In this document: positions 14,062-61,945 of the stretch, one piece after another
Layout: each line of letters begins with the position of its first letter
How positions within the stretch are numbered: position 1 is the first letter of the stretch
NCBI GenBank assembly: GCA_001642005.1
Contig: LWCA01000007.1
Coordinates: 41,675-105,674 of the forward strand
Direction of reading: 5' to 3'
Origin: Intoshia linei
Taxonomy: Eukaryota > Animalia > Orthonectida
Length of the DNA stretch: 64,000 nucleotides
Position numbers and translations under genes: made by a program
Notes under the pieces: model-generated
Database searches by the model: none
The model's input: only the letters and a program-made list of their open reading frames with translations
Told to the model about the DNA's origin: nothing

Positions 14062-14911
14062 TTATGTTAGGGTTTGTTGTTTCTTTCCCGATTTTAAAAT
14101 GCTCTCTAGTTGTATTTTGTCAGATTCATTTACTTTTAAATTGACCTAAATTACATTAATATATAGTAGGGACAGATTAAGCGGACCATATTTTGAAAAA
14201 GGTGTTAATTTACCATATCCACATCGATATTTTTTAATTGCAGAGCAAAGTAGATATTAGGTTTGGCCACAGGTCTGATCTCTCTCAAAATAGCCAACGC
14301 ATGATCAAAACTGCATTTCAAGATAACCATGATATAAGCAATAATCACAGACGAAGATCGAGATATTCCAGCAAGACTAAAATCAACATAAACAAACATA
14401 AACATAAATAAATGTAGTATAAAATAACATCAACTAATCCAGTGCTTCAAATTCAAATCAAACCGTACACTGACACAATATCAGGTACACGTATACATTT
14501 TTTGAAAATTGCAAAAAATCCACAATTCATTTTAAACAACTAATGTATGTACCAAATCATACCAGTGAACTAAAACGCATTTATTGTTAACTCTAGCATT
14601 ATGAATAAACTTTATACATCCGGGCAAAACGTGAGATATTTTGGTTTTGCAATTATCCGAAACATTGACAATATGATAAACAAAATTCTATCAAGTGTAA
14701 TTTAAAAAATATTAACCTAAACAAAAAATGTTAATTAACCTCATGCATATTTTTGGCTCTATCATGAATAGCTAAAATATGAGTAATATTGTGTATTTTC
14801 AATTGTTCTCGGTTTAATGCATCTCTAATGTTTCCGATATATAAATTTGGCATTACCTAATAATTTATATTTAAACACCGTACAAACAACCTTTGTCATA
14901 GGAACGCCCAT
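14062..14911 (-). CDS. Atypical dual-specificity phosphatase, DUSP22/DUSP15-like; exons 14911-14891, 14856-14740, 14687-14563, 14376-14214, 14145-14062
   Basis: Spliced product MGVPMTKVMPNLYIGNIRDALNREQLKIHNITHILAIHD...VSDN...FIHNAR...VLVHCLAGISRSSSVIIAYIM...IRPVAKPNIYFALQL. The catalytic HCxAGxSRS has its Cys codon split TG|T by an intron. The N-terminal MG resembles myristoylated DUSP22/15. Confidence 0.9.
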
Positions 14912-15222: not shown

Positions 15223-18200
15223 TTATAAATTTTCAATGTCGTTTTTCGTTTTTAATAATTTAATCAAATTAGATTGATCCATGTAATGAATAAGTTTGTC
15301 AATTTTCTAAATAAAAAAAGTTTTAAAAAATATAAAATCTTTAGAAATTACCTCATAATCAAAATCTGTATAAAAATTGTTGAAATCATCATTAAGCACA
15401 AAAACTTGACCGCAAACCACTTTAAGTATCTAAATAATGATATTATTAACATGTAAATATGTACAATAACGGTTAAAATAGTACCTTTTGAAAAACCCGA
15501 AAGAAAGTCACATCAAAGTCGTCATTCATATTATTAGCAATAATGTGTGATGCACAATGAGTTAGGATGAATAAAAATGATCCGACATTAGCGCAAATCT
15601 CTTTTCTAATGTATAAAATATTTTGTTCATTTTGATAGTGAATGCAATATCTGAAACAATTTTGCAAATAATTATTGGGAGGAATTTGAGAGGCAAGTAG
15701 AATTTTAAAATTTAAGTTTAAATTGAGACAATTAATGAGTCTTTTAAAGATTGTTGTTCCAAAATTATAAATAATAAAATCTGTGCAGTCTAAACTTGAA
15801 GCAGGAATTATCTTGAGTTTAGAATCGAAATGATTGAAATTACTGAATAACGTAGTATAAGATTTGCAGTTTTTATATTTATTCAATGCAGTTAAACCGG
15901 GGTTCGAAGTGTTGATCATATTTGAAATATTTTCAATTTTTTTATATAGTACAGAATTTTGCAATAAATTCATGTATTGTGATTCCAGACATTTTTCTTC
16001 TTTGTGTGGATTATTATCTTCAAGTTGTTTAATTCTATTTGTTAGATATGAAGAGTTTTTATCAAAATTTGTTTTATAATTTGACATTAGTTTTTCGTGG
16101 TTTGTTTTAGATTCATTTAGTAGTTTTTCTCTTTCGTCTTCTTCTATGGTAGATTCTTTTATTTTTTCTCTTTCGTTTTTTTCATTTTCTAATTCTCGTC
16201 TCTTTTTTTCATTGAAATCATCATTTAATTGGTTTAATTCGTCTTCAATTTTTCTAATTTTTCTAAAAAATAATACATTTTCAACACATACAATACATGT
16301 ATGATTAATGTTTAAACACCAAGAAACTAATTTCAACAAATTTAAAAACACACCCATTGCCGTACACCAGGACCATGGAAAACCAGAAGTAGGTCCAATC
16401 AGATGGAAATTGTAGGCCCTACAAAAATATTTTTACAAAATGGACCTCTATACATTGCTTAACCGATCGTTCATTGCCTAAACATTAAAAATAACCGTTG
16501 GAAATTCTCCAAAATAACCTATTAATACATTAAAAAAGTAGACCCCTCATGATTGTATGATCCGGTCTAGGGAATTATACTTAATTTCAAAAACAAAATG
16601 TAGTGGACTTGAGGATTGTAATTGATTGTTGAAATTGTAAGTTTCAATGTTATAAACCGTTTACCGTGTGTATATATAACATACCCTTTTATGTCATCTG
16701 ATTCTTTAATTATTTTTGTCTGACCATGTTGATTAATTAATAAATTATCATATTCATTAATTTCAACCAATTTTTCAGTTCCACCCGATGGACCTTTAAC
16801 ATTTGTATTGTAAATGCAAACAATCAAATCATTTAATAATTGATCCAATTCTTTCGATACATAAGCCTGAGATAAAAAAGTAAATTGTTCAGATTTGAAG
16901 TGTTCGTTAAATATACTATAACTGTACAAATAAAAAAAGTCGTTACATCTATTAGAAATAGTTCGTTTGAGATATAAATAAAAACTTTTTTCAATCAACA
17001 CCTGTTGAGTTAAAGAGGACAAAGAAAATATAAAATCATTGTAAACGCTTCTGATGTTTTTAATATGATCCTCCCTATCAGAATCCGTATACCTTTCAAA
17101 CAATTGTTTCAATTCATAAAAAATTGATTTCATTTTGTTAAATGAATTCTCCAAATTAGACAAATGATTTACTTTCTGAGAAATCAAATTTTTAATTATA
17201 TAAGAATTCAAATAAGAATTATTCACATTATATTCAAATATAGTTCCATGAAAAGTTTGATCAATCAATTCATCAACTTTGCCAATTTTCACAGAAAATT
17301 CTTGCAATAATTCCATATTCATTATAACATTTTTAGTTGATTTAAGAAATGGATCCATTTGTGGTAAAAATTTTTCCACCCTTCTTATTGATTCCAAAAC
17401 GTTGCTAGACATGATTGCAATAGAACCTCTTAAATGAAGACCTTGAGGTGGAGGGCATGTCGATTGGACTGTCTTACACACCGTGTGACAATTTTTATAG
17501 TCGTATTCAACACTACATACTTTTCCAATACCCAACGTATTATAATCTATAGTCATTTTTCCAAATTCAATTGGTATTTTTTCAGTTTTATCTATTGTGT
17601 GCATTAATCCACACAATGGGAATAATTTGTCCTGAGATGTATCGTACATTGTTCCAAGAATATGTGCGTTATTCATTTTATTTTCAATGTCGAAATATTT
17701 TGACCCGATTAGAAGAGGTATTTTTACATTTTCGTCTTGGTTTATCCTGTAGAATCCATCACATCCTCCAGTTTTAGACATTCTTGAAAAACAATGGTAC
17801 ATACTGGACCAATAATTTAACTTGTTTATAAAACTGTTGGACTTTTCGGTTTCAACGTTTTTTAAGCTCATTAAAAAGTTTTTTGAATTTTCACATATAT
17901 TACTCAAATTTGATAGGCTTTCTTCAGAAAATATTTGATCCTGTTCCATAGTTTTTATTTTTTCAAAATTTTTATCCGAATAATCAGAAAGAATCTTTGA
18001 ACTAAATGAAATAAATATAAACAATATAATTAATTGCGAATTATTTAAAAAATCTGAGGTTTTTATCTAAGAAAATTCACTTTTTTGATGTTACGATTTA
18101 TGAAAATCTAAATGATTTTAAAAATAATTCAAGAATTTATGGGTTATAAAATTGTAGAAAACGGGGTTATTTAGGTTTCTGAGGGTGAGATTTACTAAAA

Positions 18201-21200
18201 TGTTAATGATTTTAAAACGAGTATCAGTGTTTATGTTTTATAGAATTCTAAGGTTGATTTTATTTTTTAAAAAAAGGAGGAATTCGGTGTTTGACCCTGA
18301 AGGACTCTATTTCCAAAGATAAAATGTGGATTAAAACATCAATCTCGAAAAATTATAGCAATAAGGGGTTGTATTAAATTCTAGAATTGTTAATTGTTTA
18401 AATAAACACTAACATATACTCCCTGGCATTCAATTTTATAAGTAACAAATTTGTGTCAAATGGTAAAATGCGTTTTTGACCGTTAAAAAGCCAATTAATA
18501 TTATTAAATTTGATAATAAAACATTATCAGTAAAACAGTGTCGTAAATCATAAGTTTTATAAAATTCTAGGACTATTAGTTTCTGAAATAAATGGTAACA
18601 CAGAATCGTACCATTTTATATACTGATTTTTTTTACCAAGGATATTCAAAATATGCCGAGTCGTATACTACGATTCGTATTATAGGTTTTGCACTGTATA
18701 CAGTAATGTATTGATTTGTGAGGTTCATTTTTATAAATTTTTATTATTAACAAAATTGACAAGACCAGACATTATCAAGTTAGTAATGTGGACTCCCAGG
18801 AGTCTCAATAAAAAATTTAGATTATATATGGTTTTTCATTATTTTCAAGTATTAATACTGGAAATCCATGTCAATTAAGATTTAATTAGTACTCAGTATT
18901 TTAAAATTTCTCCTTGCCACCATCACAATGTAAAATCTAAATGAGCCAACATAAAAAAAGTTTTATGAATATTTAATTATTATGATGACAAACCAAGAAT
19001 TGTTAAGGACTCGCAGCGCAACAAAAATTGAGAATATCAGAACTAGATGATAGAAAGAGTTTTATTTGGTAGTACCAAATTGGTACTATAAAACTTTTAT
19101 TCAATATTTCACAACTCAAATACTAATCCAACCCACGAAACCTTAAACATAATACCTACCACATCAAAACATAAAAGTTGTCATCCATCAAAATAAAATT
19201 CATTGCACATGGTAAATTTTCAAGCTGACCAGACTGATATTTAAGTGTTTTTGCACAAACGTTTCCACTTTTAAATTTGAGACCAATACACACCTCTAAT
19301 CCGGATTTTGTTTGCAAACATGAACCAACAGTTAAGGGATGAACTAAATTGGTAATTGGATCAATAAAAGTTTTTCCTAAAGCTATAAAATGTTTGCACT
19401 TGAAACAAAACGTTACAGCCAAAGTGGGAACATAAAATCCATTTTCGTAATCTAAAAAATAATAAGTGAAAAACGAACCAATAAATAATTATTAAATATA
19501 AATAAACTTACCAATAATGAAACCATCTGCAGACAAATAATCATTTTGAGTATGTTGATGCACATGAAAAGCAGTCATTTCTTCATTATTCACATCCACA
19601 GGCATTGGAATAAATGGGATTAACACATTTTTTCCATTATTGGAATTATTAATCAAAAGTTGATAATTATCGAGATAATTGACAAGTTTTTTCTGAACAC
19701 AATCATAAAACACATTACCTTCAATTTTCGAAAAAAAGCAATATTTTTTAGAGTAAAAGTAAGCATCTCTTTTGTAACATTTATCATTATTCGGATTAAT
19801 TAATGTGTAATCTTCTTTAAGCATGTCCAGTCCCGTCAACTTGTCGAAATATGTAATTGTATCAATATCATCTTTAATGGGTAATGTGGTCATGTGTCCA
19901 TCTGAATCTTTAAAATTTTTAATTTTTTTGTCCAAATTTATAATAGATATGAGTCTGTTCATATAATATTGTCTCATATTAGAGATTAAATGAACATTAC
20001 TGATTAAAGAGTTATATAAACTTGACGATGCGTCATTTTGAGATTTGTTTATTTTTATTAATTCACAACAATGTATTATGGCACTCAAAGTCGAATGCAA
20101 ATTAGAATTAAACAAAAAGTTTTCTTTATATATCCCCGTTATATAATCTTGTATTTGTTTGGATATTTTTGTAACTATTTCAGCAAAATATTTTCTTCTA
20201 ATAATTTCCTGGTTTAACATTTCCAAATGTTTATTTAATCTATAAAAATTAACGGTGTACGTTTCAGGTTGAGAGTCATCTTTAATTTTATTGACCATCT
20301 TTTCCAGTTTAGTTACATTTTGTTTTATATTACTGTAAAATGTACAAATTTTATTGTCAAAACTTTCAGATTTAAGTAAAATGTGGGCAGATTGCTTGTT
20401 TAATAAATTGTAAAACGTTTCTTTATTAAATTTATCCAGATCCAAATAAACGTTTCGCATTTCACTCAATTCGTCAATTTCAAAATCGTCAATATTTTCA
20501 TTACAATTTGCGTATTTATCTACACTTTCCAATTTTGTACCTCGGCTAGCTAATTTTGATAAATCAAACTTTTTTCCATATTGTCTGCCTTTCAAAGAAA
20601 CGTTACCCTTCTTCCATCCAAATCTTGTAAAAATTATCTAAATAAAAGTAAATACTTGCCAATATAAAACTTACATTTATTACGATAATCAACACGAAAG
20701 ACACAATGATAGTTATTATTGTTAAAATAAAAAATAGTAAATTTGATTTGACCAAAATATCTGTATTGAACGAAAATTTCATTGTATAAAAGTTTTGTTG
20801 CGTTTGATGCATAAATTTTTTATAACTTTGACATTTACTTGAGGCAGACATGACTGCTATGTAAATTTTTTTTCCGTGGTCCACACTGTGTTTAAATACA
20901 AATACTCCCGGTTGCATGAATCGATAGGGAAATATATTGTATGATTTTGTATTTGAAGTGTTTGTCTTAACATTTTCTAATAAATCAAATGCCTTTGTAT
21001 CCAAATTTGAAGTTGGAGAATTGAATAAATTTAATCTATACATTTAATAATTTTAGTATAATTTAGTGTATGTTATTTATAAGGGTTTCTCAACTTATGG
21101 TTCCCCGGGACGAAAAATAACTAAAATTATCAAATATGATTAGCTTATTAAAAAATTTTCGTATTAGAAGTTAGTTTTTTTAAATAATACGAGTCTTACT

Positions 21201-24200
21201 TTTTTAATTAAATGGTAACACAGAAATTCATTTATACACAAGTCACAAATTATAAAATTTTAAAATTTCATAGATTCAGGGGTTTAAAACCGCAGAAAAT
21301 TTGACCATCAAATTTTTTTATAAACTTTTTGTATAGCAACAAAAAAATGTTTATACTATTCAGGTTACTTGGTTACATATACCAAAAATATCTTAATTTG
21401 GTGATTCCCACACTATTTCACGACGATTGAATAAAAAATTATAGTTCAGAATTAATTTAGCGAGCTAAACTGAATAAGACATGCATAAATATAATAAAAA
21501 AATTTACGGCGGGTACGCACGGTTTTCGAAAATTTTGACGTTCTTGGATACAATTACGAACATAACTTACCGAAAAACTCTTCGGGTGTGGGAAGGATGG
21601 CTTGACAAAATTTTTGTAAAATGGGGGATCATTTTATAAATTTATATTAAAAAATTATATTCTTGAATATCATAACTATTGTTTTAAGTTTGAAATATCA
21701 ACTGAAGAGTCAAGAAGTAGTTAGGGCTATAGGACACTATATTTTATGTATATTTTTTTAGGGTCCAAATTTTCATTTTCTTCTCGTCAAAAGCTGGGTA
21801 GGTTCGGCTCTGGTTGAATGGATAGAATCTGATAATGTCGTCCCGTGTATGAGTCTATTTTATCAGTTTTTTTAATAAATATTTGACATGAATAAAATTT
21901 ATTATCATCGTAATTGTAAAAAAACATATTTTTAAAATAAAATTTGCTCTAAATAAACTAAAATTTATAGTAAGTTTTTTCTGATTACTTCAACTTAGTT
22001 ATATTCATAGACTCATATCTGGTCCAGAATCTGAATTCCAGATCATCTGGTATTTGATTATTTGTATTGCATTTTAATGTAATGCATTTTTAGTAATTTT
22101 CCAAATTTAATTTTTATTTTAGTCCAAAACTATTTGGGAATTTTAAATTTAAACCAAACTTAAAATACTACTAAAGGCTACCCGGAAGTATTGATATCAA
22201 AAAGAACTACTGAAGCAAATATTTTTTTAAACTAATGATGGTACAGTAATTAACACATTCTTTAAATAACTAGTTTTGTCAATACATGCGTTGGTGAATA
22301 AAGAATTAAGTTTATATGTATAGTTTGATTTTATCATTTTAATAAAATGTATTTTTATATGACATGAATACTGCTACAAAATTGATGTCCTTGTGGCGCA
22401 ATGGATAGCGCATCGGACTCCTAATCCGGAGGTTGCGGGTTCGAGTCCCGTCGAGGACTTTTTTTTATTTTAACATTAAAAGAATACAATTTAATTTTAC
22501 TCAATTTAGAATGTATATTTCATCCAATTAATTTGGACAGAGTTGCAACCTTATTACTATATAATAATTATAATTAATAAACCTATCAAAAATGGGATAA
22601 TTTTGATCATTGTGAATAAAAATGATAATTTCATTAATTTCCAAGCATACAATAGGATTATGAATCCCAGAAAATTCATTCTCTGAGATGACGCCATCAA
22701 ATTTAGATTCCGATGAGCATTCTGAATTTTGATTAAACAGTTTATAGAGCACATCAGTATTATAATGTTCAACGCCTATAATGTATTTATCAATCAAAAC
22801 TACAAAATTGAGAGGTTCCACGCGATCTATATGATGGGAGCAATATTTTTCACTAAGACTATATTCATAATTGGGAATATTTAAGCAACTAGTCAAAACT
22901 TTTTGCTTCCCAATTTTTACATATGACCGTTTTACAAATTCTCCGTTTCGACAATTTAAAGTTAAGTCATTGTTGATATTTGATATACATTTTGTGTCAC
23001 AAAACGTATTACGTTCCATTATTTTGCATAAACAACGACCCAATTGAACATCGAATCGAATAAACAAATTTGAAGAGTCACAAACCTATAGATAAAAAAA
23101 TGTCACTAATAGAATTGATATATATGTACCTCATTTTTACAGTGTTGATCAAGCCAATCGATAGTCACACAATCACCATACTCATTACGAATTAAATGAT
23201 TATCGCAGTTATTATATACATGTCTTTTACATTGATAGTAACCGTTTATTTTTGCAGTGTCTGATAAATACGTACCTATTTCACAAGCACATGAGCGACT
23301 ACTCGTCTAAATTTTTGTTGTAATTGTTAATATACCAATTTATATACCTGATAGTACAAATTTTTGTTAGGTGGGCAAACGCACGAATTTTTTGTTATCA
23401 AACTATGCGTTCTTTTGCTTCCACAGTGTATACAGCTGGACATACCAACCATGTGCGTAAAGTAATTTGATTTGCAAGGCAAACATTGTCGTACATCATC
23501 CTTTCCAATAAATCGGTTAAAATACCCAATAGGACAAGGCGTAGGAATTCCACTTCCCATGGGACAATAATGACCTAAATCAGATTAAAAATGTAATTTT
23601 AATTTCTACCTATTGGACAAATGTATGATGTGTTCTGTAAAGCCCAATTTACACTATTCGCAATCGTAGAAATGTTGTAAGAAATTGTCGCCGTCGGACA
23701 AACTTGTTTACTCGGGCATAAATTACATTTCAGTCTTGTTTCGTCGCCATAGTATCCTGAGGGGCAAGGTTGACAGGTATTCTTAAAGGAATCTTGATTG
23801 GAACCAATAATATACCTGTACCCCAATGGACATTTGATCATACTAACAGCACCGCTGTTTTCTCCCAATGGACAGTAATGTGCTATTGGACATTTTATGG
23901 GTATCTCCTAATTTAAATATTTTAAGTTTTCAATTTTATCTTAATCTTTATCATAATATTTTAATTCGTACCGAACTTACAGGACAATAATATCCAACAG
24001 GACATTTAATTTTTTGAATTATTTTAGGACAAAAATATCCTAAATTGACAATTTTAAGTAAATTGAGTAAAATAATTTCACTTCATTGTTAAAGTAAATA
24101 AAAGTATTACCAATTGGACAATTGGAAGGAATTATAGTACCAGTCGGGCAATATTTACCGCTATTGCATTTATTTAGAGGAACATTCAACGCGACTTGAT

Positions 24201-51200: not shown

Positions 51201-54200
51201 AAAAATATATATAAAAAATCCATACTAATATAAATAAATTTCTCTTCGAAAAAGTGACCAAAAATATAAATTAAAACATGTCAATTTTATTGAAGACCAA
51301 ATTAATGACGTTACTGACAATAGCAATATAGGAGAAAATGAAGAATAGAAAGATTTTGAAGAATTAAGAAAGGATGTCAATTATTAGCATGCAATATTTA
51401 ATAATCTTAGAAATTATGCAAAACAACATTGTCCAAAGAATCTAGAACAGTGGTTTTGAAATGAGGGGTCGCGAAATTTATTATGGGGGTCGTGAGAATT
51501 TGAACACAGTATAAAATATAAATAAAACTGAATACGCTTTTTTAATGTTTTCATTTATGTGAATTGATAATATGTTTGGAGTATATATAAAATTTTTTAT
51601 GCTTATAAGGGGATCGCGAACACAAAAAAGTTGAAAACCACTGATCTAGAAGATATATTTATTGGAAAGCAAAATGATACAATCCTCAGGTGTTTCAAAT
51701 GAAACCACTCTGAAATATTTTTGTATAATAAACAAAGAATATATAAGCTTAGAAATTTCTCGTTTGATTTTTAATATATTTTCAAGGTCATAGTCAACGT
51801 AATTAATAATTTTAGTCGATTAATCAATCAGCTTTTGTTTCAGTTATTGTTAAAATGATAAATATTATGGTATGTAAAATGAATGAAATAAAAGTGATGA
51901 AAAAAAATGAAAAATGAAAATGAGATAAAATGAATACTATATTTTAAATAACATGTAACTATAGTGATATTATCATTTCAACTTTAGTGGTTAAAGTGAC
52001 CAAGTTGCCCAAATAAGTAGTCACTTTTCGAGTGTTTACTGTAATAATATTGTACTTAATTTTATTAATTTATAATTGTAGAAAGCAGGGATATAACATA
52101 ATTATAGTAAAACACATATATCAGTGTAAAGTACATACCGAACTTTCGGTGCAATAGTGACCCTGAAGACACTTTCTGCATTCTGCTGCTGATTTACCAC
52201 CGTAATCTGAATTGTATGTTCCTGCCAAACATTTTGCATTGTTTGGATTTTTTGAGCCCGCCACACAATAATGCCCAGGATCACATCTTCCTGAGGTCGT
52301 AGTTTCCCCTTTTCCTATAAATTACAATTTTAAGCTATACATGGTGATATTTAGCTTACCTAAGCAAAACTCACCAGCTGGACAAGTCACACAATCGGAT
52401 GATTGTGAATAACCTGCCGCGAGGCCATATGTTCCAGGTGGACATGGATATGATTTAGCATATCCTGTTGAAGTTGGACTATACATCGTTTTAATTTAAA
52501 AAAAATTGCATAATACCAGTAGTAACCCTTTGGACACTCTAAAAAATGAATCAAATAAAATAACTAATTAATAAAAAAAAAATTTTATAAAAGTTACCTA
52601 TAGGAACGTTTTTACATCCACTCAGTGTTGATTTACCTAAATTATAGATATGCATTTTTATGATAATTATGATATCATTAATATTCCACCAAATTGACTT
52701 TTTAATTATTTTTAAATTTTTACTTAAACTTTTTGACAATCTATTTGACAAATGTCTTCTGATGACAATTTTTAAAAACGTTATTAAATCAAATAAAATT
52801 TACTCTAATAAAATGTAAAATATTAATTAGTATTATGAATTATATCGAAAAAATTACAAGTTGAATCTAAGCAATAAAATCCTACTGGACAAGAAGAACA
52901 TTCTGTTGATAGTTTTAGACCCATAGTATTGTCGACAGTGCCACTTGGACAAGAAATTGCTCTTGATTTTTTTGAACCAGTCGGACAGTAATAGCCTAAA
53001 ATTTCAATATTTCATCAAAGGAAATTAAAATATAATTACCAGCTTCACATGTAATTGATAACGAATTTAGACCAATCGAAGGACAAGAAAATCCAGACGT
53101 ACAAGGCAAACAATCTGACAACAATTTTGATCCAATATTAGAATTATAGGTCCCGGTGGGACACGGACTAAATGTTGGTTAATAATTCAAAATTGAAAAC
53201 TATAATATACGCAACAAATTAAAATGTTACATAGCATCCACTATTGGCTTGGTTCGACTTCCTTTAGGGCAATAATGTCCAGCTATGCAATTTAAACATT
53301 TTGAAACCGCTAATAATGAAAATAAAAATTATTTAATTTATTTGCAAATAATAATATAATTAACAGTCGTAATCATATGCTATATAAAATATATCACGTC
53401 TTAATGCATTGGCCGTCACACTCGTTTTTTTATCACCACCCTGCAGAATTAATAAACATTTTTCCACGTTTTGAATTAGTTATACGACAGTTATTATTAG
53501 TGGTTTAAAGATGTAGAAAACTATATAATTATAATATTCGAAAAAATATCTTTCATTTAATTTGGTCAACACTGTCTTACTGCATGATAATTATGATAAA
53601 ACGGATATTTTTTATTTATTATTTATGTTAATTAGGTAAATTAATTATTTATTAAAGAATAAATATCACCGTCTGCCTGGATGCTATTTCCATAAGTTCC
53701 TTCAGGGCACAATTTGCCTTGCGATGAACCTAAAATTTTAAATAAAACTTTCATTATAACATTATGTAGGAAAATAAAATAATTATATAATGTGACGTAC
53801 CTAGAACACAGTAAAATCCTTTTGCGCAATTTCTCGGAAGATAACTGCCTAAAAATTAAAATAATTGTATTATTGTTAAATTGCATATTATTAATTTGAA
53901 ATAGATGAAAAATTTACCTTCTAGACAATACGACCCGGCAGGGCATATTGTACATTCATTAGCTAAACACATGTATAAATGTTATCGTATAAATAATTAA
54001 TATTTTATATTACCGGCTGTAAGAGAAGTTGATGCACTATACGTTCCCTCTAAATTAAATTCAAATAAATAATGAATCAAAAACAATTAAATAAAAAAGC
54101 TAAATTTAATTAAAAGAAATAAACCTTTACAAGGAAAATCCATACAATTTGTTGTTCTTTCAGGACAATAGTAGCCTTTCACACATGGAGAGGATGCTGA

Positions 54201-57200
54201 TGTTGATAAAGCTGAGGTAGAACAACATGTTCCCGCTGGACATGCTTGGCAAGCGTCTATTGACGAGGAACCAGTATTACCATTATATGTTCCTAAAATT
54301 ATTAATTTGTAACCATTAACAAAGTTTTTATACTCAATTTATATCAATTTTATGTGAATCATTTTCACAAATTGAAAAACGAAAATCTATCATATGAGTA
54401 AAATGTTACCAATAGGACATTTGAAAGAATCTTTTCCATCACAATAATGTCCAATTTTACATAATCCAGCAGTTGGGTTAGGAACAATAGATCCAGATTC
54501 ACAAACATAGCCAACGGTACAAATCGTACAATATAGTGACCCAATAGATGAATATGTTCCTTTATCGCATTGCTTTTTTTTATAATCTAATTCAAATATA
54601 TATTATTTTAGTGATTATTGGAAATAACCTTCAGTATACAAACAAGCATAGCCTAAATTATTTTATTAATTGAATATTTTTTGAGAAGACAATGTCTGTT
54701 AGGCATTGATTAATTAAGAATTAATTATATTACCAGCTTCACATTGTATACATATTGTTTGTTTTTTGGCAGAATAATAACCAGAACTGCATTTAACAGG
54801 TCTTAGTGTTTTAGTTGCACATTTATAACCGGATGGACAATCAATACAATAATATGAACTTCCCAGAGAATACTGTCCAGCATCACAAGCAGTTCTAAAC
54901 TCGTACTACAAATGATGAATTGAATTCGAATGCAGATGGCGGAATCATTTATTCGTTAATTTATTCGAATTATTCTTATCATCCTTTTCATAATTATAAT
55001 CGTTTACTTATATAAAATTGAATATACGTGTGGGTTACCGTTTATTTAAAAAATTATCAATCCAAGAAAAATAACCCAAATTTTCATTCAGGTTTTTGAA
55101 TGTCATGTTTTAATCCAAGATTCATTTTCAGAAATTGATTCTTTCAAGGCGAAAAACCCAATTTCCACTTTTTTTAAAAAAATAAAATCAGCCCTAGAAT
55201 TTTCAAAAACATAAATTGCAGGACGCGTTTTAAAATCATTAACGTTATTGTAGAATTTTTTTGAAAGAATTTTCCAGAAACGTACATTTTAACGTTAAAA
55301 CCACAAATTACCCTTTTATTGAAAAATTTAATAGCCCTAAAATTTTAAAAAAAATTACATTTCATTTAGTTGTCTCCAGTTAATACGCATTAAAAATTTT
55401 AATTTCACAAAGTAATGCTTTCACGGCCAAAAAATCACTATTATTTTGTAACTATTTTATTAACAAACATGTAAAACAAAAATTTTTAAATAATTAATGA
55501 TTCTATAATTTAAAAAAAACTATTCTAATACAGCTTATTCCAGGTAATATAGACATAAAATTTTAACCTCAGAAATCTACGTATTCCCGGTGAAAAATAA
55601 TCTTGAATATATTATGAACCAATATTTTTCAAATTTTTGAATTAAAATTTAAATATTGATCCTACAATTTCGAAAAAAGTGGGAATTGACGGTATGGATA
55701 TTTAAAATACAGTAAATATGAATTTCAATCTCATGAATTGATGAATTATGTTTTTTTATCATTTCTACGCAATTTCTAATTTTCAATAACTTTCAAAGTT
55801 TAAAATCAACTTTAATTACAAATATAACTTTGATAATATAATTTTTAGTTTTATTTCAATGTTGGTAGCATTACTTTATCCTAAATGTTTGATTGAAGAA
55901 AAAGTATGTAAATTAAATTTTAAATTTTATTGGTATTTAAAATTTTATTTTTTCTGGAATTCATGTTATTTATGACGATTTTTATGGTTGTTTTTAAAAT
56001 AATACAATCACTTTCTATAAATAATCGAAAATTCAGCCCGGTAGAACTAGCTGTTATTTGTACGAAGTACATGACAGTCAAGCTAGTTTATTATTATTAT
56101 TATGGTGAATAATATAATTAATTTGGCTTACACTATCGCTGTAGTCGTAGATGGACAGTAAGACCCAGCTGGACAAAGTGTACAGGAAGTACTACTTGCA
56201 AGTGCGTATGATCCGAGAGTACACTTTGTTATTGTGGCTAAATATTTTTTTAATAAATAAAATATGTAAAAAGTGTGTGCAAAACTAAACCTATACTCTT
56301 AGATGGACATATACTTCCGGCTACACATACATGGCATTTATCGTCGCCAGCTACCGAATATTCGCCAGAATTACATTGAGTTTTCGCAATCGTTGTACAA
56401 CTATAACCGGCTGGACATATGATACACTCTTCTAATCCCACCGTTGAATATGTACCATATTTACAATTGACTGGCAAATAGGCTCGATTTAATATGAATT
56501 TTCCTAAATTATAATTATTATAAAATGTATAATTACAAAATTTTAAAACAAAAAGATCAGTTATATATTTTCAAAATAACCTGCAGGAGATATAGTACAT
56601 GTTGTACTCAAGGGTAAAGCATAGTGTCCAAATGCGCATGAATACTCTTTAAATCTATTTCATAATTAGTAATTTACCATATAATGCATACCCGTCTGTA
56701 TAGTAGCCACCTCTACTAGGAATACAATACATATTTCCAGCTTCCGAATAGTAACCATCAGAACATTTCGTTTTAGTTACATGACATCTATAACCTTCTG
56801 GACAATAAATACAACTGGTTGATTTAACAGCACTGTAATATCCTATAAACATCATATACAATATGTTATGTTTCATGAGTCAGCAATAGGTAACATTTAT
56901 CAAAAGTACGTCAGGTACTACGATAAAGTGGGACAATTTTCACATAAATTATTAAATTATTACCTTTTTCACATAAAATAGGAATACTATAAGCGTTTTT
57001 ACAATAGCTACCGGCTAAAAATTACAAATAAATTTTTTAAATCAAATCTAGGAATTGATGAATATTACCGGGACAATCTGTACATGCAGTAGCTGTTGGA
57101 GTTTCAACGTTATACGTTCCTAATTTATTCAATTATTAAATTTAATACTGTTTAATACATTCCATGTATATTGAATTTTGATATAATATACACATTGTAC

Positions 57201-60200
57201 AATGTACAGGGGATAGATTTTATTGTCAAAGTAATGATATTTTTTTATTTAAACTGATACATACAAATCCAATTCGAAGGCAACCCAAAATAAAAACCAA
57301 TTCAGAATCACCATTAATTCATTAGAATTAGCTTCTTGATGAGACAATGGTGTAAATTAAATTACTTTTACTTACTATTTAATTATACACTTTATAATGT
57401 ACATTAAATTTAAATTAATTGTTTATGTAATTTGTAAGGTAGACGAGTACATAATAAAGTAAAAGACATTTCAGTATGGAACTCATTTAGTCCTAGATCG
57501 GAATGTTTATAGGCAAAATTGTGAAATAATGTACCATGTAATAATGTGTCGTTATTATTTATTGTTTTTAAATATACCTGATGGGCATGGAACAGGCAAA
57601 ACATTATTATTAGTACAAAGATTTCCATCCGGGCATAATGTACATTCTAAAAATAAATATAAAAATAAAATTTTGAAATAAATACAAATATTTCATTGAA
57701 ATAAAAGTTTTATAAATAATAGGTTTAAAAAAATAATATAGTACAATGTACATAAACAATTGTACAACACCAAGATATATTACTAGATTTTCCAGTTAAA
57801 GAATAATATCCAGCAGGACAAACAACAGCTTTTTCGTTATTTTGACAATATGAGCCAGCCGGGCAAATAATGCATAAATCGGTGCCTAATAAAGAATAAT
57901 AGCCTTCTTTACATTCTTCTGCTTGTCTTTTTTCGTTGCATTGAGAGCCAACAGAACATTTGAAGCATTTTATTTCTATTAAACGTAAAATTAATTGTTA
58001 CTACATGCATTATAATATAATGCTTACATTAATCATAAATACATTAAAAATTACGTCCAAATTGAGACGTATAACCAGTGGCACATGCAATCGGAATTAC
58101 ATTATTGTTTAGACATGAAAATCCAAAGGGGCATGTTATACATTCTATTGCCTTTGCAAGTGAATAAGTACCAACATTACAAGCTGATTCGGTAATTTTA
58201 TTAGCACAATGATATCCAGCTGTACAGGGTGTACACGTATTTTCACTTGTTGCTGAATAATACCCATAATTGCATGGTGTAGGGTTTGTACTAAAAATAT
58301 AAAAAAATAATCAAGTCATTAAATCTTATCAAATATATTGAAAATATAAAATACCCAGATGAGCAGTCAAAACCACCAGGACAGTCATAACATCCTGTTC
58401 CCATAGCATTTATTATTTTTCCTATAAATTAAAGTATTGTAATTTACACGATAAAATAGTAATACATATAGTAATAAATGTATGCTTTTTTGGCCGGGTA
58501 GATGAATGTTTATAAGATTACAATTAATGATATGCTCAGGTTTTATATATCTCAGATGTTGTGTTATTTAAAATTCTAACCCCATAATTTACAAACAGAC
58601 AGATAAGTAGACAAAGTCTAATACTATACATCATGGGTTCTTAACTTTTTTCAACTTGGCACCACTTAATTCAATAAAATTCAATTTGGCACCCCTAGAA
58701 TGTAGTAAACTTAAATTTAAAAAAAGTTAATAATATCATAATAATATACGGTAACAAGAAATTTCTAGTTGAAATGGCTAAAATGGCTTTAAATTTAAAT
58801 TATAAAAAACATTTGAACATAAAAAATACTGTGGTTTGTACGATTTATCAGTATCATTTATTTTAGTATCGTTTAATATTAACCGATTTGATTTTTTTGA
58901 TAAATTCTTAAAATCAAAAAAGGCATCCACGTGCAAAATAGGTTTTTCTAATAAAAAAAATTGGACACCCTAATATACATATTATAAATATTTAATATTT
59001 TAAAAAGTTAAATTAATAAATAAAATTTAACTTAATTTTCGAAACTTCATTCAACTTTAAAAATTATAGCTACAAAATCATTTTTATTCAAAAATTTTCT
59101 GGTACCCCCCAAAAACCGGTTTTCATTCCAGCACTCCAGGTTAATAACCAATGCTATTCATTTTAGATATTTTACTTTCAATAGGTAAAGATGAATTATA
59201 AAGTCATTATTTTATAATTTTTAATATTTTTTTAAATTACCGGCAGTGCACGAAGTACATGTAACAACACCAATATCGGAATATTCTGTGTCAGCGCATT
59301 TCGTTATGGTTGTCGTTGTGCATTTATAATCAACTGGGCACAATTCACAAGTTGTTGCACCTGTAAATGTTAATTATATATTTTACTAATATTAAAACTA
59401 ATATTAACTTGAAAATAAGAACTTAAAAACACCCAAAATGAAAAAATTGAGTAAATTTAAAGTATTTTTAAAATTTTGTATCATTCATCATAAGTTTTCT
59501 ATAACCATTCACTAGTTCAGTGGTTCGTCACTCCTCTGCAGCGCCATGTATTTTTATCAAAAAGTATATTTTATTAGTGGGAAGTTCCCATTGGGAACCA
59601 AATACGAAAAATTTTCTAACAAAAATGAATTGTATTATACATGGTATATATTCTTATCCTTTCTCTATTTCTCTCTATTGGTGAATTAGATAGATAATAC
59701 TGTATTTGCTTAATTTGCTTATTTTCTTCATGTATTATAATGACTGAGCATGAAAAATCGTTCAATATTTTTAGTTTTTATTCTAACCTGTAGTTAGAGA
59801 GTATTGATTTGCTGGGCATGCGATATGGTTTGATAATCCATCGGTAGGACAATAAAATCCAGATTCGCAAGTTTTACCTTAGAATAAAATAAATTAAAAA
59901 TAATGGATTTATAATAAATTTAAATACACGTTTTTCCATCAGAGTAGGTGCCAGCCAAGCAAATAATAGGCTGAAAAGTTCCTACATTTTCACATTTATA
60001 CCCCGGTTTACACGTTGTGCATGATGTAGAACCAGAGGTATCGGTATATTTTCCAATTATGCAGTTTACACAAGCCGTTAAACTTGTTTGAGAAGTGATG
60101 GCATTGCTTGTACCAACCGGGCATGGTATAATTGATATAGTACCATCTGGACAGTAAAATCCTTTTGGACAAGTTTGACAATTTAATGACGTGTCTAAGT

Positions 60201-60273
60201 ATTTACCGCTAATGCAGGGTGTAATGGAATAAATTGATTTAACAATAAGAAAAAATAATAATAAGCGAATCAT
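15223..60273 (-). CDS. Giant Cys-rich GCC2/GCC3 (ephrin-receptor-like) repeat type I membrane protein, ~138 exons, ~6,300 aa (hand estimate)
   Basis: ATG 60273 starts a signal peptide (MIRLLLFFLIVKSIYS). Hundreds of CPxGxYC / CxxCxxG units can be spliced in frame across the junctions I traced, down to ~23100. Then a globular domain (PIVCLE...YPIFDRLNLFNS...FPYRFMQPGVFVF), a TM helix (~20675-20745, continuing IIFTRFGW), and cytoplasmic exons 20637-19512, 19451-19160, ~18001-16685, 16262-15486, 15428-15351, 15306-15223 (TAA). AATAAA at 15216-15211. Confidence 0.85.
18040..18590 (-). mobile_element. Internal fragment of the Helitron family (minus strand)
   Basis: Shares TTTGACCCTGAAGG, GGTTGATTTTATTTTTTAAAAAAAGG and TTTTTGACCG blocks with 6700-7000 and 10530-10700, and in reverse with 55020-55350. 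Confidence 0.5.
22387..22459 (+). tRNA. tRNA-Arg (anticodon CCT), intronless
   Basis: Cloverleaf: acceptor GTCCTTG/CGAGGAC; D-arm GCGC-AATGGATA-GCGC; anticodon arm TCGGA-CT CCT AA-TCCGG; T-arm GCGGG-TTCGAGT-CCCGT. Intact A and B boxes. Confidence 0.96.
22459..22466 (+). terminator. RNA polymerase III oligo-T terminator of the tRNA
   Basis: A run of 8 T begins at the discriminator position. Confidence 0.85.
24476..24523 (+). mobile_element. Helitron-family 3' terminus in an intron
   Basis: CTCAGTAGAGCTAGGTGCTGTTTGTACAAAGCAAAAACAGTCAAGTTAG|T, homologous to the other 3' ends. Confidence 0.6.
26468..26960 (+). mobile_element. Complete short non-autonomous Helitron (~493 bp)
   Basis: 5' end A|TCTTTTACTTGTATAAAATTGAAAGTGTTTGTGTG; subterminal hairpin ACTGTTTGTACGAATTTCATAACA; 3' end CTAG|T. 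Inserted between A and T with no TSD. Confidence 0.75.
28512..28887. repeat. Foldback-like inverted array of ~28-30 bp tandem repeats
   Basis: About 4.5 units of AAAATYCMAYTTTACCAACCTTTAAGGG-like sequence (28512-28641), a ~40 bp spacer, then about 7 inverted units (28681-28887). Confidence 0.85.
34466..34673. mobile_element. hAT-type MITE
   Basis: TIRs TAGGGATGTGCAG / rc TAGGTGTGTGCGA. Flanks ATACATAT / ATACATCA (6/8 TSD). Confidence 0.5.
34770..35101 (+). mobile_element. Helitron-family 3' fragment
   Basis: Internal CGGGTCAAAAAGCCCAATT block, and end TTGTTTGTACGTAGTACATAAAAGTCAACCTAG|T. Confidence 0.55.
36650..37998. mobile_element. Older TIR element hosting the nested hAT insertion
   Basis: Left end TGTTTTTAAACTTAAATCTCCACGATTCTTATT versus rc right end TGTTTCTTAAAATCAAAACTCCACGAATCTCCTATT. 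Subterminal CCCTTAAA also mirrored. Confidence 0.5.
36959..37509 (+). mobile_element. Internally deleted hAT transposon retaining the transposase C-terminal dimerization region
   Basis: TIRs CAGAGCCGTTTTAA / rc CAGAGTCGTCTTAA; TSD CTTTCAAG / CTTTCAAA. ~37079-37234 translates TFSKLKIIKNELRYFLAQPRLNVLFLMSIENISFDNMIFDFSQKIVRKLHL*, the hAT C-terminal pattern (ERSFSKLK.IK..LR....Q.RLN.L.L.SIE). Confidence 0.85.
49096..49303. mobile_element. hAT (Charlie-like) MITE, 208 bp
   Basis: TIR CAGTGGTTTT...AAAACCACTG; perfect 8-bp TSD TTATAAAC (49088-49095 / 49304-49311); internal GGGGTCGCG motifs. Confidence 0.9.
51137..52041. mobile_element. pogo/Tigger-like non-autonomous element
   Basis: TIRs CAGTAGACACTCGAAAAGTGAC / rc CAGTAAACACTCGAAAAGTGAC; TA on both flanks; repeated AAAGTGACCA subterminal motifs. 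Confidence 0.85.
51448..51643. mobile_element. hAT (Charlie-like) MITE nested in the pogo-like element; sister copy of 49096-49303
   Basis: TIR CAGTGGTTTT...AAAACCACTG; perfect TSD ATCTAGAA (51440-51447 / 51644-51651); body aligns along its length with 49096-49303. Confidence 0.9.
55000..56086 (+). mobile_element. Complete longer non-autonomous Helitron (~1.09 kb) filling one intron
   Basis: 5' end A|TCGTTTACTTATATAAAATTG; hairpin CTGTTATTTGTAC-GAA-GTACATGACAG; 3' end CTAG|T. Confidence 0.8.
58632..59153. mobile_element. hAT-type MITE (~520 bp)
   Basis: TIRs CATGGGTTCTTAAC / rc CATTGGTTATTAAC; TSD CTATACAT / CTATTCAT (7/8). Confidence 0.65.
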
Positions 60274-60883: not shown

Positions 60884-61945
60884 ATGGACATTTACGATGA
60901 CATTATGGAACGAAACAGGCAGAACAAGCCAGGAAATAATGTGACATTTGCGCCAGTTGCAATGGAAGTTATAATTCATATGATAAGCGCTTTCTTTGAA
61001 GATGAAAATAAAAACCCCTTTACTAAATACTTAAATTTGAATAAAATACACTATAACGCACTTGATGAATTAAGAAAACGAAAGGTATTATTTGAGAAAA
61101 GTCAATTTTACGTTAATATTGGTACATCATTATTTTATAACGAAAATTTCAAATTTGAGAAAGAGATACAGGCTAAACTTTCAAGTTTTGAATTTAATAC
61201 ATTTTTCCAGGAAATTGATTTTAAAAAGAAACAGGCAAAGGATTTTGTATACAAATTTATAAAAATAATGTTGAATGAATCTTATCAACCTCCAGTTGTC
61301 ACACTTTCACCTTACAATGATATGAAATTATTAGTAATCAATATGTTTACTCTATGCGTACCGTTCTATCACGGGTTTAATATTGAAATGACGGAATATA
61401 GAAGTTTTTTTTGTTTGGGAACTAGAAAATACACTCGAGTCGAAATGATGTGTGTTAATGCCAAATTAAATTGTCAAAGAATTGATAACATGTCAATTGT
61501 TGACGTTCCTTTATTAGTGGATGGTTTAAAAATGCTTCTTGTGCATAGCAAAGATAATACTTATAAAATGGATAGTCAAGACATTTTAAAACTTTCAAAA
61601 AAAGATAATTGCAATCTCAGAAAAGATTATACATTGTATGTGCCAAAATTTTTTCTAGAATCAAATTTAGACATTGAAGAATCTTTTAATAGCTTGGTTG
61701 ATAAATTATTGATTCGCCCTGATTCAGTAAACCTTTCTAATATTACGCACATTAGTAAATTAAAAGTTAATGAAAGTGGAGTTAATGTTACTATTAATAA
61801 GAATCAAGCATCTAAATATACCAGATTTTATGAAGATATAATTATTGATTCTTCGTTTTATTGTCTCATTTTATTTTATCCACCTACTGCACTTTCTTTA
61901 CCTGAACCCATCATTTGTCAATATGCTTTCATCGACAACCCATGA
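60884..61945 (+). CDS. Divergent intronless serpin, probably non-inhibitory and intracellular
   Basis: 353 aa; N-terminal NVTFAP (serpin N..FSP), LLVIN...F, F....T....F, VEMM, IVDVP, LYVPKF.LES.LD, THISKLKVNESG, C-terminal IDSSFY.LI...FIDNP. No signal peptide. Confidence 0.8.
   Translation: MDIYDDIMERNRQNKPGNNVTFAPVAMEVIIHMISAFFEDENKNPFTKYLNLNKIHYNALDELRKRKVLFEKSQFYVNIGTSLFYNENFKFEKEIQAKLSSFEFNTFFQEIDFKKKQAKDFVYKFIKIMLNESYQPPVVTLSPYNDMKLLVINMFTLCVPFYHGFNIEMTEYRSFFCLGTRKYTRVEMMCVNAKLNCQRIDNMSIVDVPLLVDGLKMLLVHSKDNTYKMDSQDILKLSKKDNCNLRKDYTLYVPKFFLESNLDIEESFNSLVDKLLIRPDSVNLSNITHISKLKVNESGVNVTINKNQASKYTRFYEDIIIDSSFYCLILFYPPTALSLPEPIICQYAFIDNP

What the first reader, a model, noticed from the sequence alone, without database searches (positions are those of the whole stretch)
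15223..60273. One giant orphan surface receptor hidden across ~138 exons
Seen: dozens of small Cys-rich ORFs in the track are exons of a single gene. They splice in frame from a signal peptide (60273) through roughly 4,800 aa of CPxGxYC/CxxC repeats to one TM helix and a ~1,200 aa cytoplasmic tail (coiled coil, beta-hairpin repeats, HxxxH module). Known: GCC2/GCC3 (ephrin-receptor-like) repeat arrays occur in large, poorly characterised surface proteins of protists and animals. Inference: keeping a ~6,300 aa protein intact in a compact genome implies strong selection, e.g. a long sensory or adhesive filament on cilia or gametes coupled to an unknown intracellular output. Automatic annotation probably splits it into several genes. 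This is the best candidate for an undescribed system in the window.
Basis: partly seen in the sequence, partly recalled or inferred. Interest (0 to 1): 0.8.

Follow-up and report, generated by a model that had tools for sequence, protein, structure and literature searches.

The report
Giant cysteine-repeat membrane protein gene
The span holds one real 137-exon gene for a 6,337-residue single-pass surface protein of the parasite Intoshia linei, but it is neither hidden nor orphan: GenBank already carries the same single model, and it belongs to an uncharacterised family of giant membrane proteins found from protists to birds.

Summary
Observation confirmed. The minus strand from 60273 to 15223 reads as one in-frame chain of 137 GT-AG exons. 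It runs signal peptide, about 4,750 aa of CPxGxYC repeats (Pfam Ephrin_rec_like), a 330-aa juxtamembrane domain, one TM helix and a 1,223-aa tail.

Interpretation only partly right.
- The public annotation does not split the gene. GenBank A3Q56_00182 (6,337 aa) maps exactly onto these exons.
- The protein is not an orphan. The juxtamembrane domain, TM, tail repeats, coiled coil and C-terminal HxxxH domain align in order with giant proteins of oyster, annelid, brachiopod, Trichoplax, Oikopleura, fishes, frogs, reptiles, birds, a choanoflagellate, metamonads and other protists.
- Intoshia itself has four loci with the C-terminal domain.

That domain folds (AF2, pLDDT about 90) like minimal zincin metalloproteases, but the whole family has HxxxH…D and never HExxH. 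It is probably a non-catalytic or atypical zincin.

No Pfam model, solved structure or paper describes the tail. Function is inferred only: a long disulphide-stapled surface rod tied to the cytoplasm. The cilia or gamete idea could not be tested, and no RNA data for Intoshia were available. Another note of this scan (s1-789528) had flagged the same C-terminal domain on this window.

The parts
15223..60273 (-). Whole gene: 137 exons, CDS 19,014 nt, 6,337 aa. It equals GenBank hypothetical protein A3Q56_00182 of Intoshia linei.
   Evidence: Exact spliced mapping of P0001 onto the window. Independent DP prediction gives the same start and nearly the same exons.
59928..60273 (-). Exon 1: start codon, signal-peptide-like N-terminus and the first Cys-rich modules.
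   Evidence: ORF listing. Pfam Ephrin_rec_like 29.4 bits against a cut-off of 23.1, plus a weaker TNFR_ELAPOR1_6th match.
23348..59877 (-). Exons 2-128: array of CPxGxYC / CxxCxxGxYC modules (aa 116 to about 4760). Cys periodicity is 18/36/54 aa, which gives roughly 90 modules of about 54 aa. Introns are mostly phase 1 at G|YYC.
   Evidence: Pfam PF07699 on single exons and precomputed for P0001.
36541..36630 (-). Candidate extra 90-nt repeat exon (phase 1-1) absent from the public model. It is either a missed exon or a cassette exon.
   Evidence: Chosen by my DP. It is the only Cys-motif ORF found inside any intron over 150 nt.
28013..28060 (-). 48 nt kept as coding in the public model, giving a 16-aa hydrophobic insert. 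It is probably intron: an alternative phase-1 GTATTT donor lies at 28060, and using it restores the normal repeat spacing.
   Evidence: Sequence read. A spurious 'TM' at aa 4009 appears in the hydropathy scan.
20741..23306 (-). Exons 129-131 up to the TM helix: conserved non-repeat juxtamembrane ectodomain (aa 4764 to about 5090, with a PGV(F/Y)VF motif). The 1,547-nt intron here holds an antisense tRNA-Arg.
   Evidence: Lophotrochozoan profile against P0001, E 1.9e-52 over aa 4764-5164. BLASTP against oyster, Trichoplax, Oikopleura and Kipferlia. No Pfam match.
20626..20740 (-). Single TM helix (aa 5092-5114), split by a 37-nt intron and followed by a basic stretch (positive-inside).
   Evidence: Hydropathy scan. 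Translation of 20740-20675 and 20637-20605.
16685..20637 (-). Exons 132-134: membrane-proximal tail, helical stretches and degenerate hairpin-type repeats (aa 5415-5767). The repeats are homologous to the DPxTGxxxPIxG repeats of relatives.
   Evidence: phmmer tail against tail. Profile matches at 5417-5534 (2.5e-11) and 5659-5768 (7e-11). Repeat motif seen in oyster, Trichoplax, Salpingoeca and Kipferlia.
15485..16262 (-). Exon 135: coiled coil (aa 6025 to about 6115) plus the conserved C-terminal zincin-like domain. The invariant HxxxH lies at 15559-15545 and the invariant Asp at 15520-15518.
   Evidence: Alignment A1 invariant columns. AF2 with A1 gives pLDDT about 90 for residues 150-259. 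Foldseek and VIA matches to minigluzincins and Wss1. Coordinates checked.
15223..15429 (-). Exons 136-137 (15429-15352 and 15306-15223): last 52 aa and the stop codon.
   Evidence: Exact mapping of P0001.

Best explanation
Shown:
- The span is one protein-coding gene of the orthonectid Intoshia linei, already in GenBank as hypothetical protein A3Q56_00182.
- It encodes a type-I membrane protein. The order of parts is signal peptide, about 4,750 aa of disulphide-rich ephrin-receptor-like (GCC2/GCC3, TNFR-like) modules, a conserved 330-aa juxtamembrane domain, one TM helix, and a 1,223-aa cytoplasmic tail.
- The tail has hairpin-type repeats, a coiled coil and a C-terminal zincin-like domain. 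That domain carries invariant H-x3-H-x8-D but no catalytic Glu.
- The protein is a fast-evolving member of an unnamed, functionally uncharacterised family of giant proteins. The family has the same order of parts in many animals (placozoans, spiralians, a tunicate; shorter or partial gene models in vertebrates) and in distant protists.

Inferred (about 40% likely):
- The ectodomain forms a long, stiff rod projecting far from the cell surface, which adheres or senses mechanically.
- The tail couples the rod to cytoplasmic partners, probably the cytoskeleton.
- The Glu-less zincin domain works as a metal- or peptide-binding module rather than as a protease.
For: One gene:
- Exact 137-exon GT-AG mapping of a database protein found by searching a single tail exon.
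- My own DP finds the same chain.
- Flanking genes are unrelated: DUSP at 14205-14853 and a serpin at 60884-61945.
- Relatives carry array, TM, tail and C-terminal domain in one polypeptide. These include a 4,706-aa protein on a 14.7-kb contig and a 4,775-aa 'complete' MMETSP transcript.

Family membership:
- BLASTP and phmmer hits in the same order along the juxtamembrane region and tail.
- The profile of oyster, Owenia and Lingula hits P0001 at 4764-5164 (1.9e-52) and 6118-6295 (3.5e-30), with three weaker modules in order between them.
- The tail is 50% identical over 2,359 aa between oyster, annelid and brachiopod.
- 38 further members were found, including vertebrates and protists.

C-terminal domain:
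- Invariant P, Y, L, H, H, D, F, F columns.
- The HxxxH motif is kept in over 30 members and is never HExxH.
- AF2 model has pLDDT about 90 in this domain.
- Best folds are jannalysin, selecase, abylysin and Wss1: Foldseek probability 1.0, TM-score 0.55-0.61 when normalised by target length, and VIA Z 7.5-8.4 at rmsd 2.0-2.9.

Type-I topology: N-terminal signal sequence, a single hydrophobic helix, and basic residues after it.
Against: - No transcript data for Intoshia could be reached, so splicing of all 136 introns is predicted rather than observed.
- Function rests on architecture only. No member of the family has a described function in the papers searched.
- The fold match of the C-terminal domain is modest (Foldseek E 6e-3; VIA Z about 8, which is near the background level for that tool). 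Metal binding is unproven.
- The middle of the Intoshia tail (exon 134) has no detectable relative by single-sequence search of 1.84 billion proteins. It also folds poorly (pLDDT 35).
- Orthology to a particular branch of the family is unresolved (quick tree).
Confidence: 0.85

Rival explanations
1. The span holds two or more separate genes, for example secreted Cys-repeat proteins plus an independent TM/tail gene. The single model would then be a prediction artefact.
For: My DP gene finder chains neighbouring genes too easily. It also swallowed the DUSP gene downstream, so a continuous chain alone proves little. No Intoshia RNA evidence was available. Some introns are long (1.0-1.7 kb).
Against: Only one signal peptide and one TM helix exist in the span. 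Relatives in more than 20 taxa show array, juxtamembrane domain, TM, tail and C-terminal domain in one polypeptide in the same order, some from single contiguous ORFs or transcripts. Long introns contain no start-plus-signal-peptide ORFs and only one extra repeat exon.
Confidence: 0.05
2. One reading: a lineage-restricted (orphan) sensory or adhesive filament of cilia or gametes with an unknown output module.
For: The architecture suits a long surface filament. Among the 53 proteins retrieved, none came from fungi, land plants, arthropods, nematodes or mammals. Orthonectid free-living stages are ciliated (general knowledge).
Against: It is not orphan. The taxon list comes from three word-limited searches and is not a presence/absence profile. 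No ciliary-proteome evidence was found: the supplementary tables of the one ciliome preprint opened are not held, and its main text mentions neither ephrin-type nor cysteine-rich proteins.
Confidence: 0.15
3. The C-terminal domain is an active metalloprotease, so the protein is a membrane-anchored cytoplasmic protease or a self-processing receptor.
For: The domain has a zincin-like fold. The two His sit on the predicted active-site helix, followed by an invariant Asp.
Against: The residue after the first His is S, C, A, I or T in all members that keep the motif, and never Glu. No Pfam peptidase model matches. One Intoshia paralogue and some fish copies have lost a His.
Confidence: 0.1
4. A decaying or non-functional gene, i.e. 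a repeat array drifting in an AT-rich genome.
For: The sequence is very divergent from relatives (22-27% identity). The tail is shortened by about 800-1,000 aa. N-glycosylation sequons are nearly gone.
Against: The 19-kb CDS has no frame break across 136 introns. All family-invariant residues of the C-terminal domain are kept. The Cys framework is intact, with 511 Cys.
Confidence: 0.03

Closest known systems
Unnamed giant 'ephrin type A/B receptor-like domain-containing' proteins. Examples: Saccostrea cucullata LOC134264959 (6,488 aa), Owenia fusiformis unnamed product (4,208 aa), Lingula anatina LOC106159584, Trichoplax TRIADDRAFT_55968 and _51343, Salpingoeca rosetta PTSG_01976.
   Same: Same order of parts: Cys-repeat array, conserved juxtamembrane domain, one TM helix, DPxTG-type repeats, coiled coil, and a C-terminal HxxxH…D domain. 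The similarity is significant and runs in the same order.
   Different: The Intoshia protein is much more divergent. Its hairpin repeats are degenerate, and it lacks about 800-1,000 aa of the E/K-rich middle tail. It is depleted of N-X-S/T sequons where most relatives are enriched. Its gene is broken into 137 exons.
Minimal zincin metallopeptidases: minigluzincins (projannalysin 4jix, proabylysin 4jiu, selecase 4qhf) and WLM/Wss1 (5xbn).
   Same: The predicted fold of the last 110 or so residues of exon 135 matches these. It has a helix, a three-stranded sheet, and a helix carrying two His four residues apart.
   Different: No catalytic Glu (HxxxH, not HExxH) anywhere in the family. No sequence-level match to any Pfam peptidase family. 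The domain sits at the end of a giant membrane protein.
Characterised proteins with GCC2/GCC3 (Ephrin_rec_like, PF07699) modules: Eph receptors, SCUBE, SVEP1, ELAPOR1/2.
   Same: The Cys-rich module type matches PF07699, and exon 1 gives a below-threshold match to TNFR_ELAPOR1_6th.
   Different: Those proteins carry a few modules among other domains (from general knowledge). Here about 90 modules form almost the entire ectodomain. There is no kinase, CUB, EGF, sushi or M6PR domain.
Plakin (plectin) repeats.
   Same: The tail repeats of relatives share a hydrophobic-DPxTG hairpin-like core. This resemblance is recalled from memory.
   Different: The period is about 16 aa instead of 38. The Pfam library, which should include the plectin-repeat model, reported only Ephrin_rec_like for the Owenia protein and nothing relevant for the Intoshia tail exons.

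Membership tests
Ephrin_rec_like / GCC2_GCC3 repeat proteins (Pfam PF07699) | Match to PF07699 above the gathering score | tested here: met
   Exon 1 scores 29.4 bits and the ORF at 44973-45461 scores 34.9 bits against a cut-off of 23.1. PF07699 is precomputed for P0001.
Unnamed giant array-TM-tail family (oyster LOC134264959, Owenia, Lingula, Trichoplax, Salpingoeca PTSG_01976) | Conserved non-repeat juxtamembrane ectodomain followed by a single TM helix | tested here: met
   Profile of three lophotrochozoan members against P0001 aa 4764-5164, E 1.9e-52. A single TM helix lies at the equivalent place in the retrieved models that include this region.
Unnamed giant array-TM-tail family | Cytoplasmic DPxTGxxxPIxG-type repeat region | tested here: met
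   Profile hits at 5417-5534 (2.5e-11) and 5659-5768 (7e-11). The motif itself is degenerate in Intoshia, with one clean copy at aa 5519.
Unnamed giant array-TM-tail family | C-terminal domain with NAFRNS…ILFIR…H-x3-H-x8-D…F…FY signature | tested here: met
   Profile E 3.5e-30. All eight invariant columns are present in the window protein.
Zincin metallopeptidases (minigluzincin / WLM-SprT type) | Zincin fold: mixed sheet plus active-site helix | tested here: met
   Foldseek top hits are 4jix, 4qhi and 4jiu, with 5xbn at rank 11: probability 0.93-1.0, TM-score 0.51-0.61 normalised by target length. VIA-align gives Z 7.5-8.4 at rmsd 2.0-2.9 over 81-93 residues. The scores are modest.
Zincin metallopeptidases (minigluzincin / WLM-SprT type) | HExxH motif with catalytic Glu | tested here: not met
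   The window has HCASH. More than 30 relatives have H-[SCAIT]-x-[AS]-H, and none has Glu.
Zincin metallopeptidases (minigluzincin / WLM-SprT type) | Bound zinc and a third metal ligand | not testable with these tools
   An invariant Asp lies nine residues after the second His and is a candidate ligand. Metal binding needs experiment.
Eph receptor tyrosine kinases | Ephrin-binding domain and cytoplasmic kinase domain | tested here: not met
   No Pfam kinase or ephrin-binding-domain match in any tail or N-terminal exon.
Plakin repeat proteins (plectin-type repeats) | Match to a Pfam plectin-repeat model | tested here: not met
   No such match in the Intoshia tail exons at E up to 10, nor in the Owenia relative at E up to 0.01.

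The most novel reading that the evidence does not exclude
The gene is the orthonectid representative of an undescribed, probably very ancient eukaryotic family of giant type-I membrane proteins. Their cytoplasmic tails combine three domain types that have no Pfam model in the copy used, no solved relative and no literature found here. These are a juxtamembrane domain, DPxTG hairpin repeats, and a Glu-less zincin-like HxxxH…D terminal domain. The family would be a surface-to-cytoplasm tether or mechanosensor, retained in four copies even in one of the smallest animal genomes.
Probability: 0.45. Interest if true: 0.55.

Novelty: new member of a known kind. Interest (0 to 1): 0.38.

Why it matters
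As a gene model the finding is ordinary: it is already in GenBank as one protein. What came out of checking it is more useful.

A giant membrane-protein family with a 50%-conserved, 2,300-aa cytoplasmic tail in spiralians has no described function, no domain models for its tail and no structure. Members occur from metamonads to birds.

Its terminal domain looks like a zincin that lost, or never had, the catalytic Glu. This gives a concrete handle for biochemistry, and tractable organisms carry clear copies (Salpingoeca, Trichoplax, Owenia, oyster, zebrafish-like fishes).

That a 42-Mb parasite genome keeps four loci with this domain argues that the family does something basic.

Tried and rejected
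- Ciliate genetic code as the cause of the many short ORFs: rejected. TGA-only reading gives no long frames beyond what the AT-rich composition explains, and clear GT-AG introns are present.
- My DP gene finder as a test of gene borders: rejected. It merged the downstream DUSP gene, and after self-training it over-split the tail and even skipped the TM exon.
- Pfam on all tail exons at E up to 10, and on relatives P0013, P0015, P0018 and P0020: only Ephrin_rec_like.
- PDB sequence search with the Owenia relative: nothing.
- ESM Atlas with exon 134 and with the C-terminal domain: no usable hit, or only composition-like phage hits.
- AF2 on exon 134 without an alignment: pLDDT 35, unusable.
- PF27023, which is precomputed on one MMETSP relative: not in the local Pfam copy, so its identity is unknown.
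- Literature: no paper mentions the locus tags, and GCC2/GCC3 papers do not treat this family. The supplementary tables of the ciliome preprint are not held.
- Quick tree of the C-terminal domain: the Intoshia copies pair up (window with C1601; C24 with C2635), but deeper orthology is unresolved. The careful search did not finish.

Exons were searched one by one by reference. The whole protein was searched only through the database entry P0001 that a tool returned. Joined chains were built only inside scripts, to check frame and exon mapping.
Full report
**What the window is.** The window is AT-rich (about 28% GC) and eukaryotic, with short GT-AG introns. Earlier notes of this scan named the genome as the orthonectid Intoshia linei. 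The source name of the protein found below agrees.

The span is bounded by unrelated genes:
- a dual-specificity phosphatase at 14205-14853 (minus strand);
- a Death-domain ORF on the plus strand at 13128-13808;
- a serpin at 60884-61945 (plus strand);
- SPT6 at 1203-5237 (minus strand).

**Checking the observation.** Table-11 ORF lists show dozens of short minus-strand ORFs rich in CPxGxYC. I first ruled out a ciliate code as the cause.

I then wrote a small dynamic-programming gene finder using codon log-odds, splice-site matrices and frame-aware introns. With an intergenic state allowed, it returned one chain starting at the ATG at 60273, with 133 exons. After self-training it returned 139 exons. 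It also swallowed the DUSP gene, and later over-split the tail. It therefore shows that a frame-consistent chain exists, but it cannot set gene borders.

The decisive check came from a search by reference with one tail exon (window:16687-18000:-) against 1.84 billion representative proteins. The only hit was a 6,337-aa protein, 100% identical over its residues 5587-6024.

An exact spliced mapping of that protein (P0001) onto the window gives the following:
- 137 exons from 60273 to 15223, all introns GT-AG;
- CDS 19,014 nt, median exon 99 nt, median intron 70 nt.

Further counts:
- 96 of the 136 exons that follow an intron start in phase 1, and 71 internal exons are phase 1-1.
- In 68 phase-1 introns the split codon is a Gly, mostly the Gly of G|(Y/F)YC. 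This is what tandem duplication of exon-sized repeat units would leave.
- The motif C..G.[YFWH]C is found 85 times in minus-strand frames and never in plus-strand frames.

P0001 is GenBank 'hypothetical protein A3Q56_00182 [Intoshia linei]'. UniRef names it as an ephrin type A/B receptor-like domain-containing protein. The public annotation thus already holds exactly this single model. It is not split and not hidden.

I found two small flaws in that model:
- A 90-nt phase 1-1 repeat exon at 36630-36541 is skipped. It is the only Cys-motif ORF inside any long intron.
- 48 nt at 28060-28013 are kept as coding and give a 16-aa hydrophobic insert that mimics a second TM helix. A canonical GTATTT donor at 28060 in the same phase removes it and restores the usual repeat spacing.

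**Anatomy of the protein.**
- N-terminus: signal-peptide-like, a short basic start followed by a hydrophobic run.
- Ectodomain: the 4,743 aa after the signal peptide hold 511 Cys (10.8%) with periodicities of 18, 36 and 54 aa. This gives roughly 90 modules of Pfam Ephrin_rec_like (PF07699) size.
- Juxtamembrane part: a non-repeat domain at aa 4764 to about 5090, then one TM helix at 5092-5114, followed by basic residues.
- Tail: 1,223 aa.
- Pfam finds nothing in any tail exon, even at E 10.

**Not an orphan.** A word-based search with P0001 residues 4300-6337 returned giant proteins (3,500-7,800 aa). They come from Saccostrea, Elysia, Trichoplax (two), Lytechinus, Oikopleura (two), Salpingoeca rosetta and Kipferlia bialata, plus a second Intoshia gene, A3Q56_02216.

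Local BLASTP and phmmer show that the similarity is not limited to the repeats. The juxtamembrane region (4765-5230) and the C-terminal module (6010-6295) match in nearly all of them. The oyster protein aligns over 4765-5773 and 6009-6294.

Searching onward with the oyster tail found Owenia (annelid) and Lingula (brachiopod) proteins that are 50% identical over the whole 2,359-aa tail.

A profile of these three matches P0001 in order:

| P0001 residues | E-value |
|---|---|
| 4764-5164 | 1.9e-52 |
| 5417-5534 | 2.5e-11 |
| 5659-5768 | 7e-11 |
| 6026-6099 | 1e-3 |
| 6118-6295 | 3.5e-30 |

Intoshia lacks about 800-1,000 aa of the E/K-rich middle of the tail.

A third search, with the Owenia juxtamembrane-plus-repeat region, added 38 proteins:
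- spiralians: a nemertean and further molluscs;
- vertebrates: frogs, turtles, a gavial, birds and several fishes;
- protists: strain Nk52, Barthelona, Chilomastix, Aduncisulcus, Stylonychia and Phytophthora.

Every retrieved model that includes the membrane-proximal region has a single TM helix placed after the Cys-rich part, where one is present. Several models are partial.

Two relatives come from single contiguous sequences: a 4,706-aa protein on a 14.7-kb contig and a 4,775-aa 'complete' MMETSP transcript. Both carry the array, the TM helix and the C-terminal domain. This is the best available evidence that the one-gene model is right, given that I could reach no Intoshia RNA data.

**The tail modules.** In oyster, Trichoplax, Salpingoeca and Kipferlia, the region matching P0001 5415-5767 consists of tandem units of about 16 aa of the form hydrophobic-DPxTGxxxPIxG.

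For the C-terminal part I aligned exon 135 by reference with eight full-length relatives (alignment A1). The invariant columns are P194, Y209, L216, H235, H239, D248, F253 and F257. This gives an H-x3-H-x8-D signature at window 15559-15518.

AF2 with this alignment gave mean pLDDT 76, and about 90 over residues 150-259. The predicted layout is helix, three strands, then a helix bearing both His.
- Foldseek against the PDB ranks jannalysin, selecase and abylysin first, then Wss1, ZMPSTE24, BlaR1 and IrrE. Best E is 6e-3, probability 1.0, TM-score 0.61 normalised by target length.
- VIA-align, independent of Foldseek, gives abylysin Z 8.4 (rmsd 2.0, 81 residues), jannalysin 7.9, Wss1 7.9 and selecase 7.5.

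These scores are modest but consistent. The domain has a minimal zincin fold. Yet the residue after the first His is S, C, A, I or T in more than 30 family members, and never Glu.

The family therefore fails the defining HExxH test for zincin peptidases. It is best read as a non-catalytic, or at least atypical, zincin-like module. This agrees with a note left on this window by the scan (s1-789528).

**Copies in Intoshia.** Four loci carry this domain:
- the window (HCASH);
- contig C1601 (HSLSH);
- contig C2635 (HCLSH);
- contig C24, which is A3Q56_02216 and has lost both His.

In a quick tree they pair as window with C1601 and C24 with C2635. Deeper placement is unresolved.

**How it most likely works.** The following are shown:
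- type-I topology;
- a huge disulphide-rich modular ectodomain;
- a conserved juxtamembrane domain;
- a conserved cytoplasmic tail ending in a zincin-like domain.

The following are inferred, at about 40% likelihood. The array forms a long stiff rod on the cell surface that adheres or senses force. The tail ties it to cytoplasmic partners, and the terminal domain acts as a metal- or peptide-binding module.

But those lists come from three sensitivity-limited searches and are not a presence/absence profile. I found no ciliary-proteome support either. I rate the idea at about 15%.

**Comparison with what is known, and novelty.** The module type is the known Ephrin_rec_like / GCC2_GCC3 domain. 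There is no kinase, CUB, EGF or sushi domain, so the protein is not an Eph receptor, SCUBE, SVEP1 or ELAPOR relative in architecture.

The true family is the unnamed set of giant proteins listed above. All are 'uncharacterized' or 'hypothetical' in their source records. No paper in the held library mentions the locus tags I tried. The Owenia member has no sequence relative in the PDB.

The gene itself is therefore a new, divergent member of a kind already present in databases. The family's tail architecture seems undescribed, with one caveat: a very recent Pfam entry (PF27023), precomputed on one relative, could not be inspected.

**How the searches were done.** Exons were searched one at a time by reference. 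The full-length searches used the database protein P0001 returned. Joined chains existed only inside scripts, to check frame and mapping.

**Verdict.** It is somewhat higher for the uncharacterised family and its Glu-less zincin domain.

Noticed in passing
window 22387-22459 (+): A tRNA-Arg (anticodon CCT) gene lies antisense inside the 1,547-nt intron between exons 130 and 131 of the giant gene.
   Followed up: no
P0001 ectodomain (window 23348-60273, minus strand): N-X-S/T sequons are strongly depleted: 8 observed against 34 ± 5 in shuffles, z -4.8. The ectodomains of oyster, Trichoplax, Salpingoeca and a fish relative are strongly enriched (z +8 to +16). Strain Nk52 is also depleted. STT3 is present in the genome, so the N-glycosylation machinery is not simply missing.
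   Followed up: partly
G000 contigs C1684, C2523, C2734, C1687 and others: At least 114 further Ephrin_rec_like matches lie elsewhere in this 42-Mb genome. Several sit in long uninterrupted frames (1,808, 1,281 and 1,264 aa), in contrast with the 137-exon structure here.
   Followed up: no
G000:C1601:1680-1952 (L004), C2635:20650-20841 (L005), C24:29718-30473 (L006): Three more loci carry the family's C-terminal zincin-like domain. C1601 and C2635 keep HxxxH. C24 (GenBank A3Q56_02216) has lost both His.
   Followed up: partly
G000:C1364:1426-1761 (L008): A paralogous juxtamembrane-plus-TM exon (32% identity, inside a 676-aa open frame) lies on another contig. It is possibly the 5' part of one of the paralogues above.
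   Followed up: no
window 1203-5237 (-), 13128-13808 (+), 14205-14853 (-), 60884-61945 (+): Neighbouring genes are SPT6 (a 1,344-aa single ORF), a Death-domain ORF, a dual-specificity phosphatase and a serpin. The gap between the giant gene's stop codon and the DUSP start is only about 370 nt.
   Followed up: partly
relatives P0030, P0032, P0033, P0050: Some vertebrate gene models of this family are named after neighbouring genes (NF-kappa-B inhibitor zeta, sodium channel beta-3) and carry their Pfam domains. They look like annotation fusions. Tetrapod models (about 2,300-2,900 aa) lack the Cys-repeat array, which may be real loss or truncated models.
   Followed up: no
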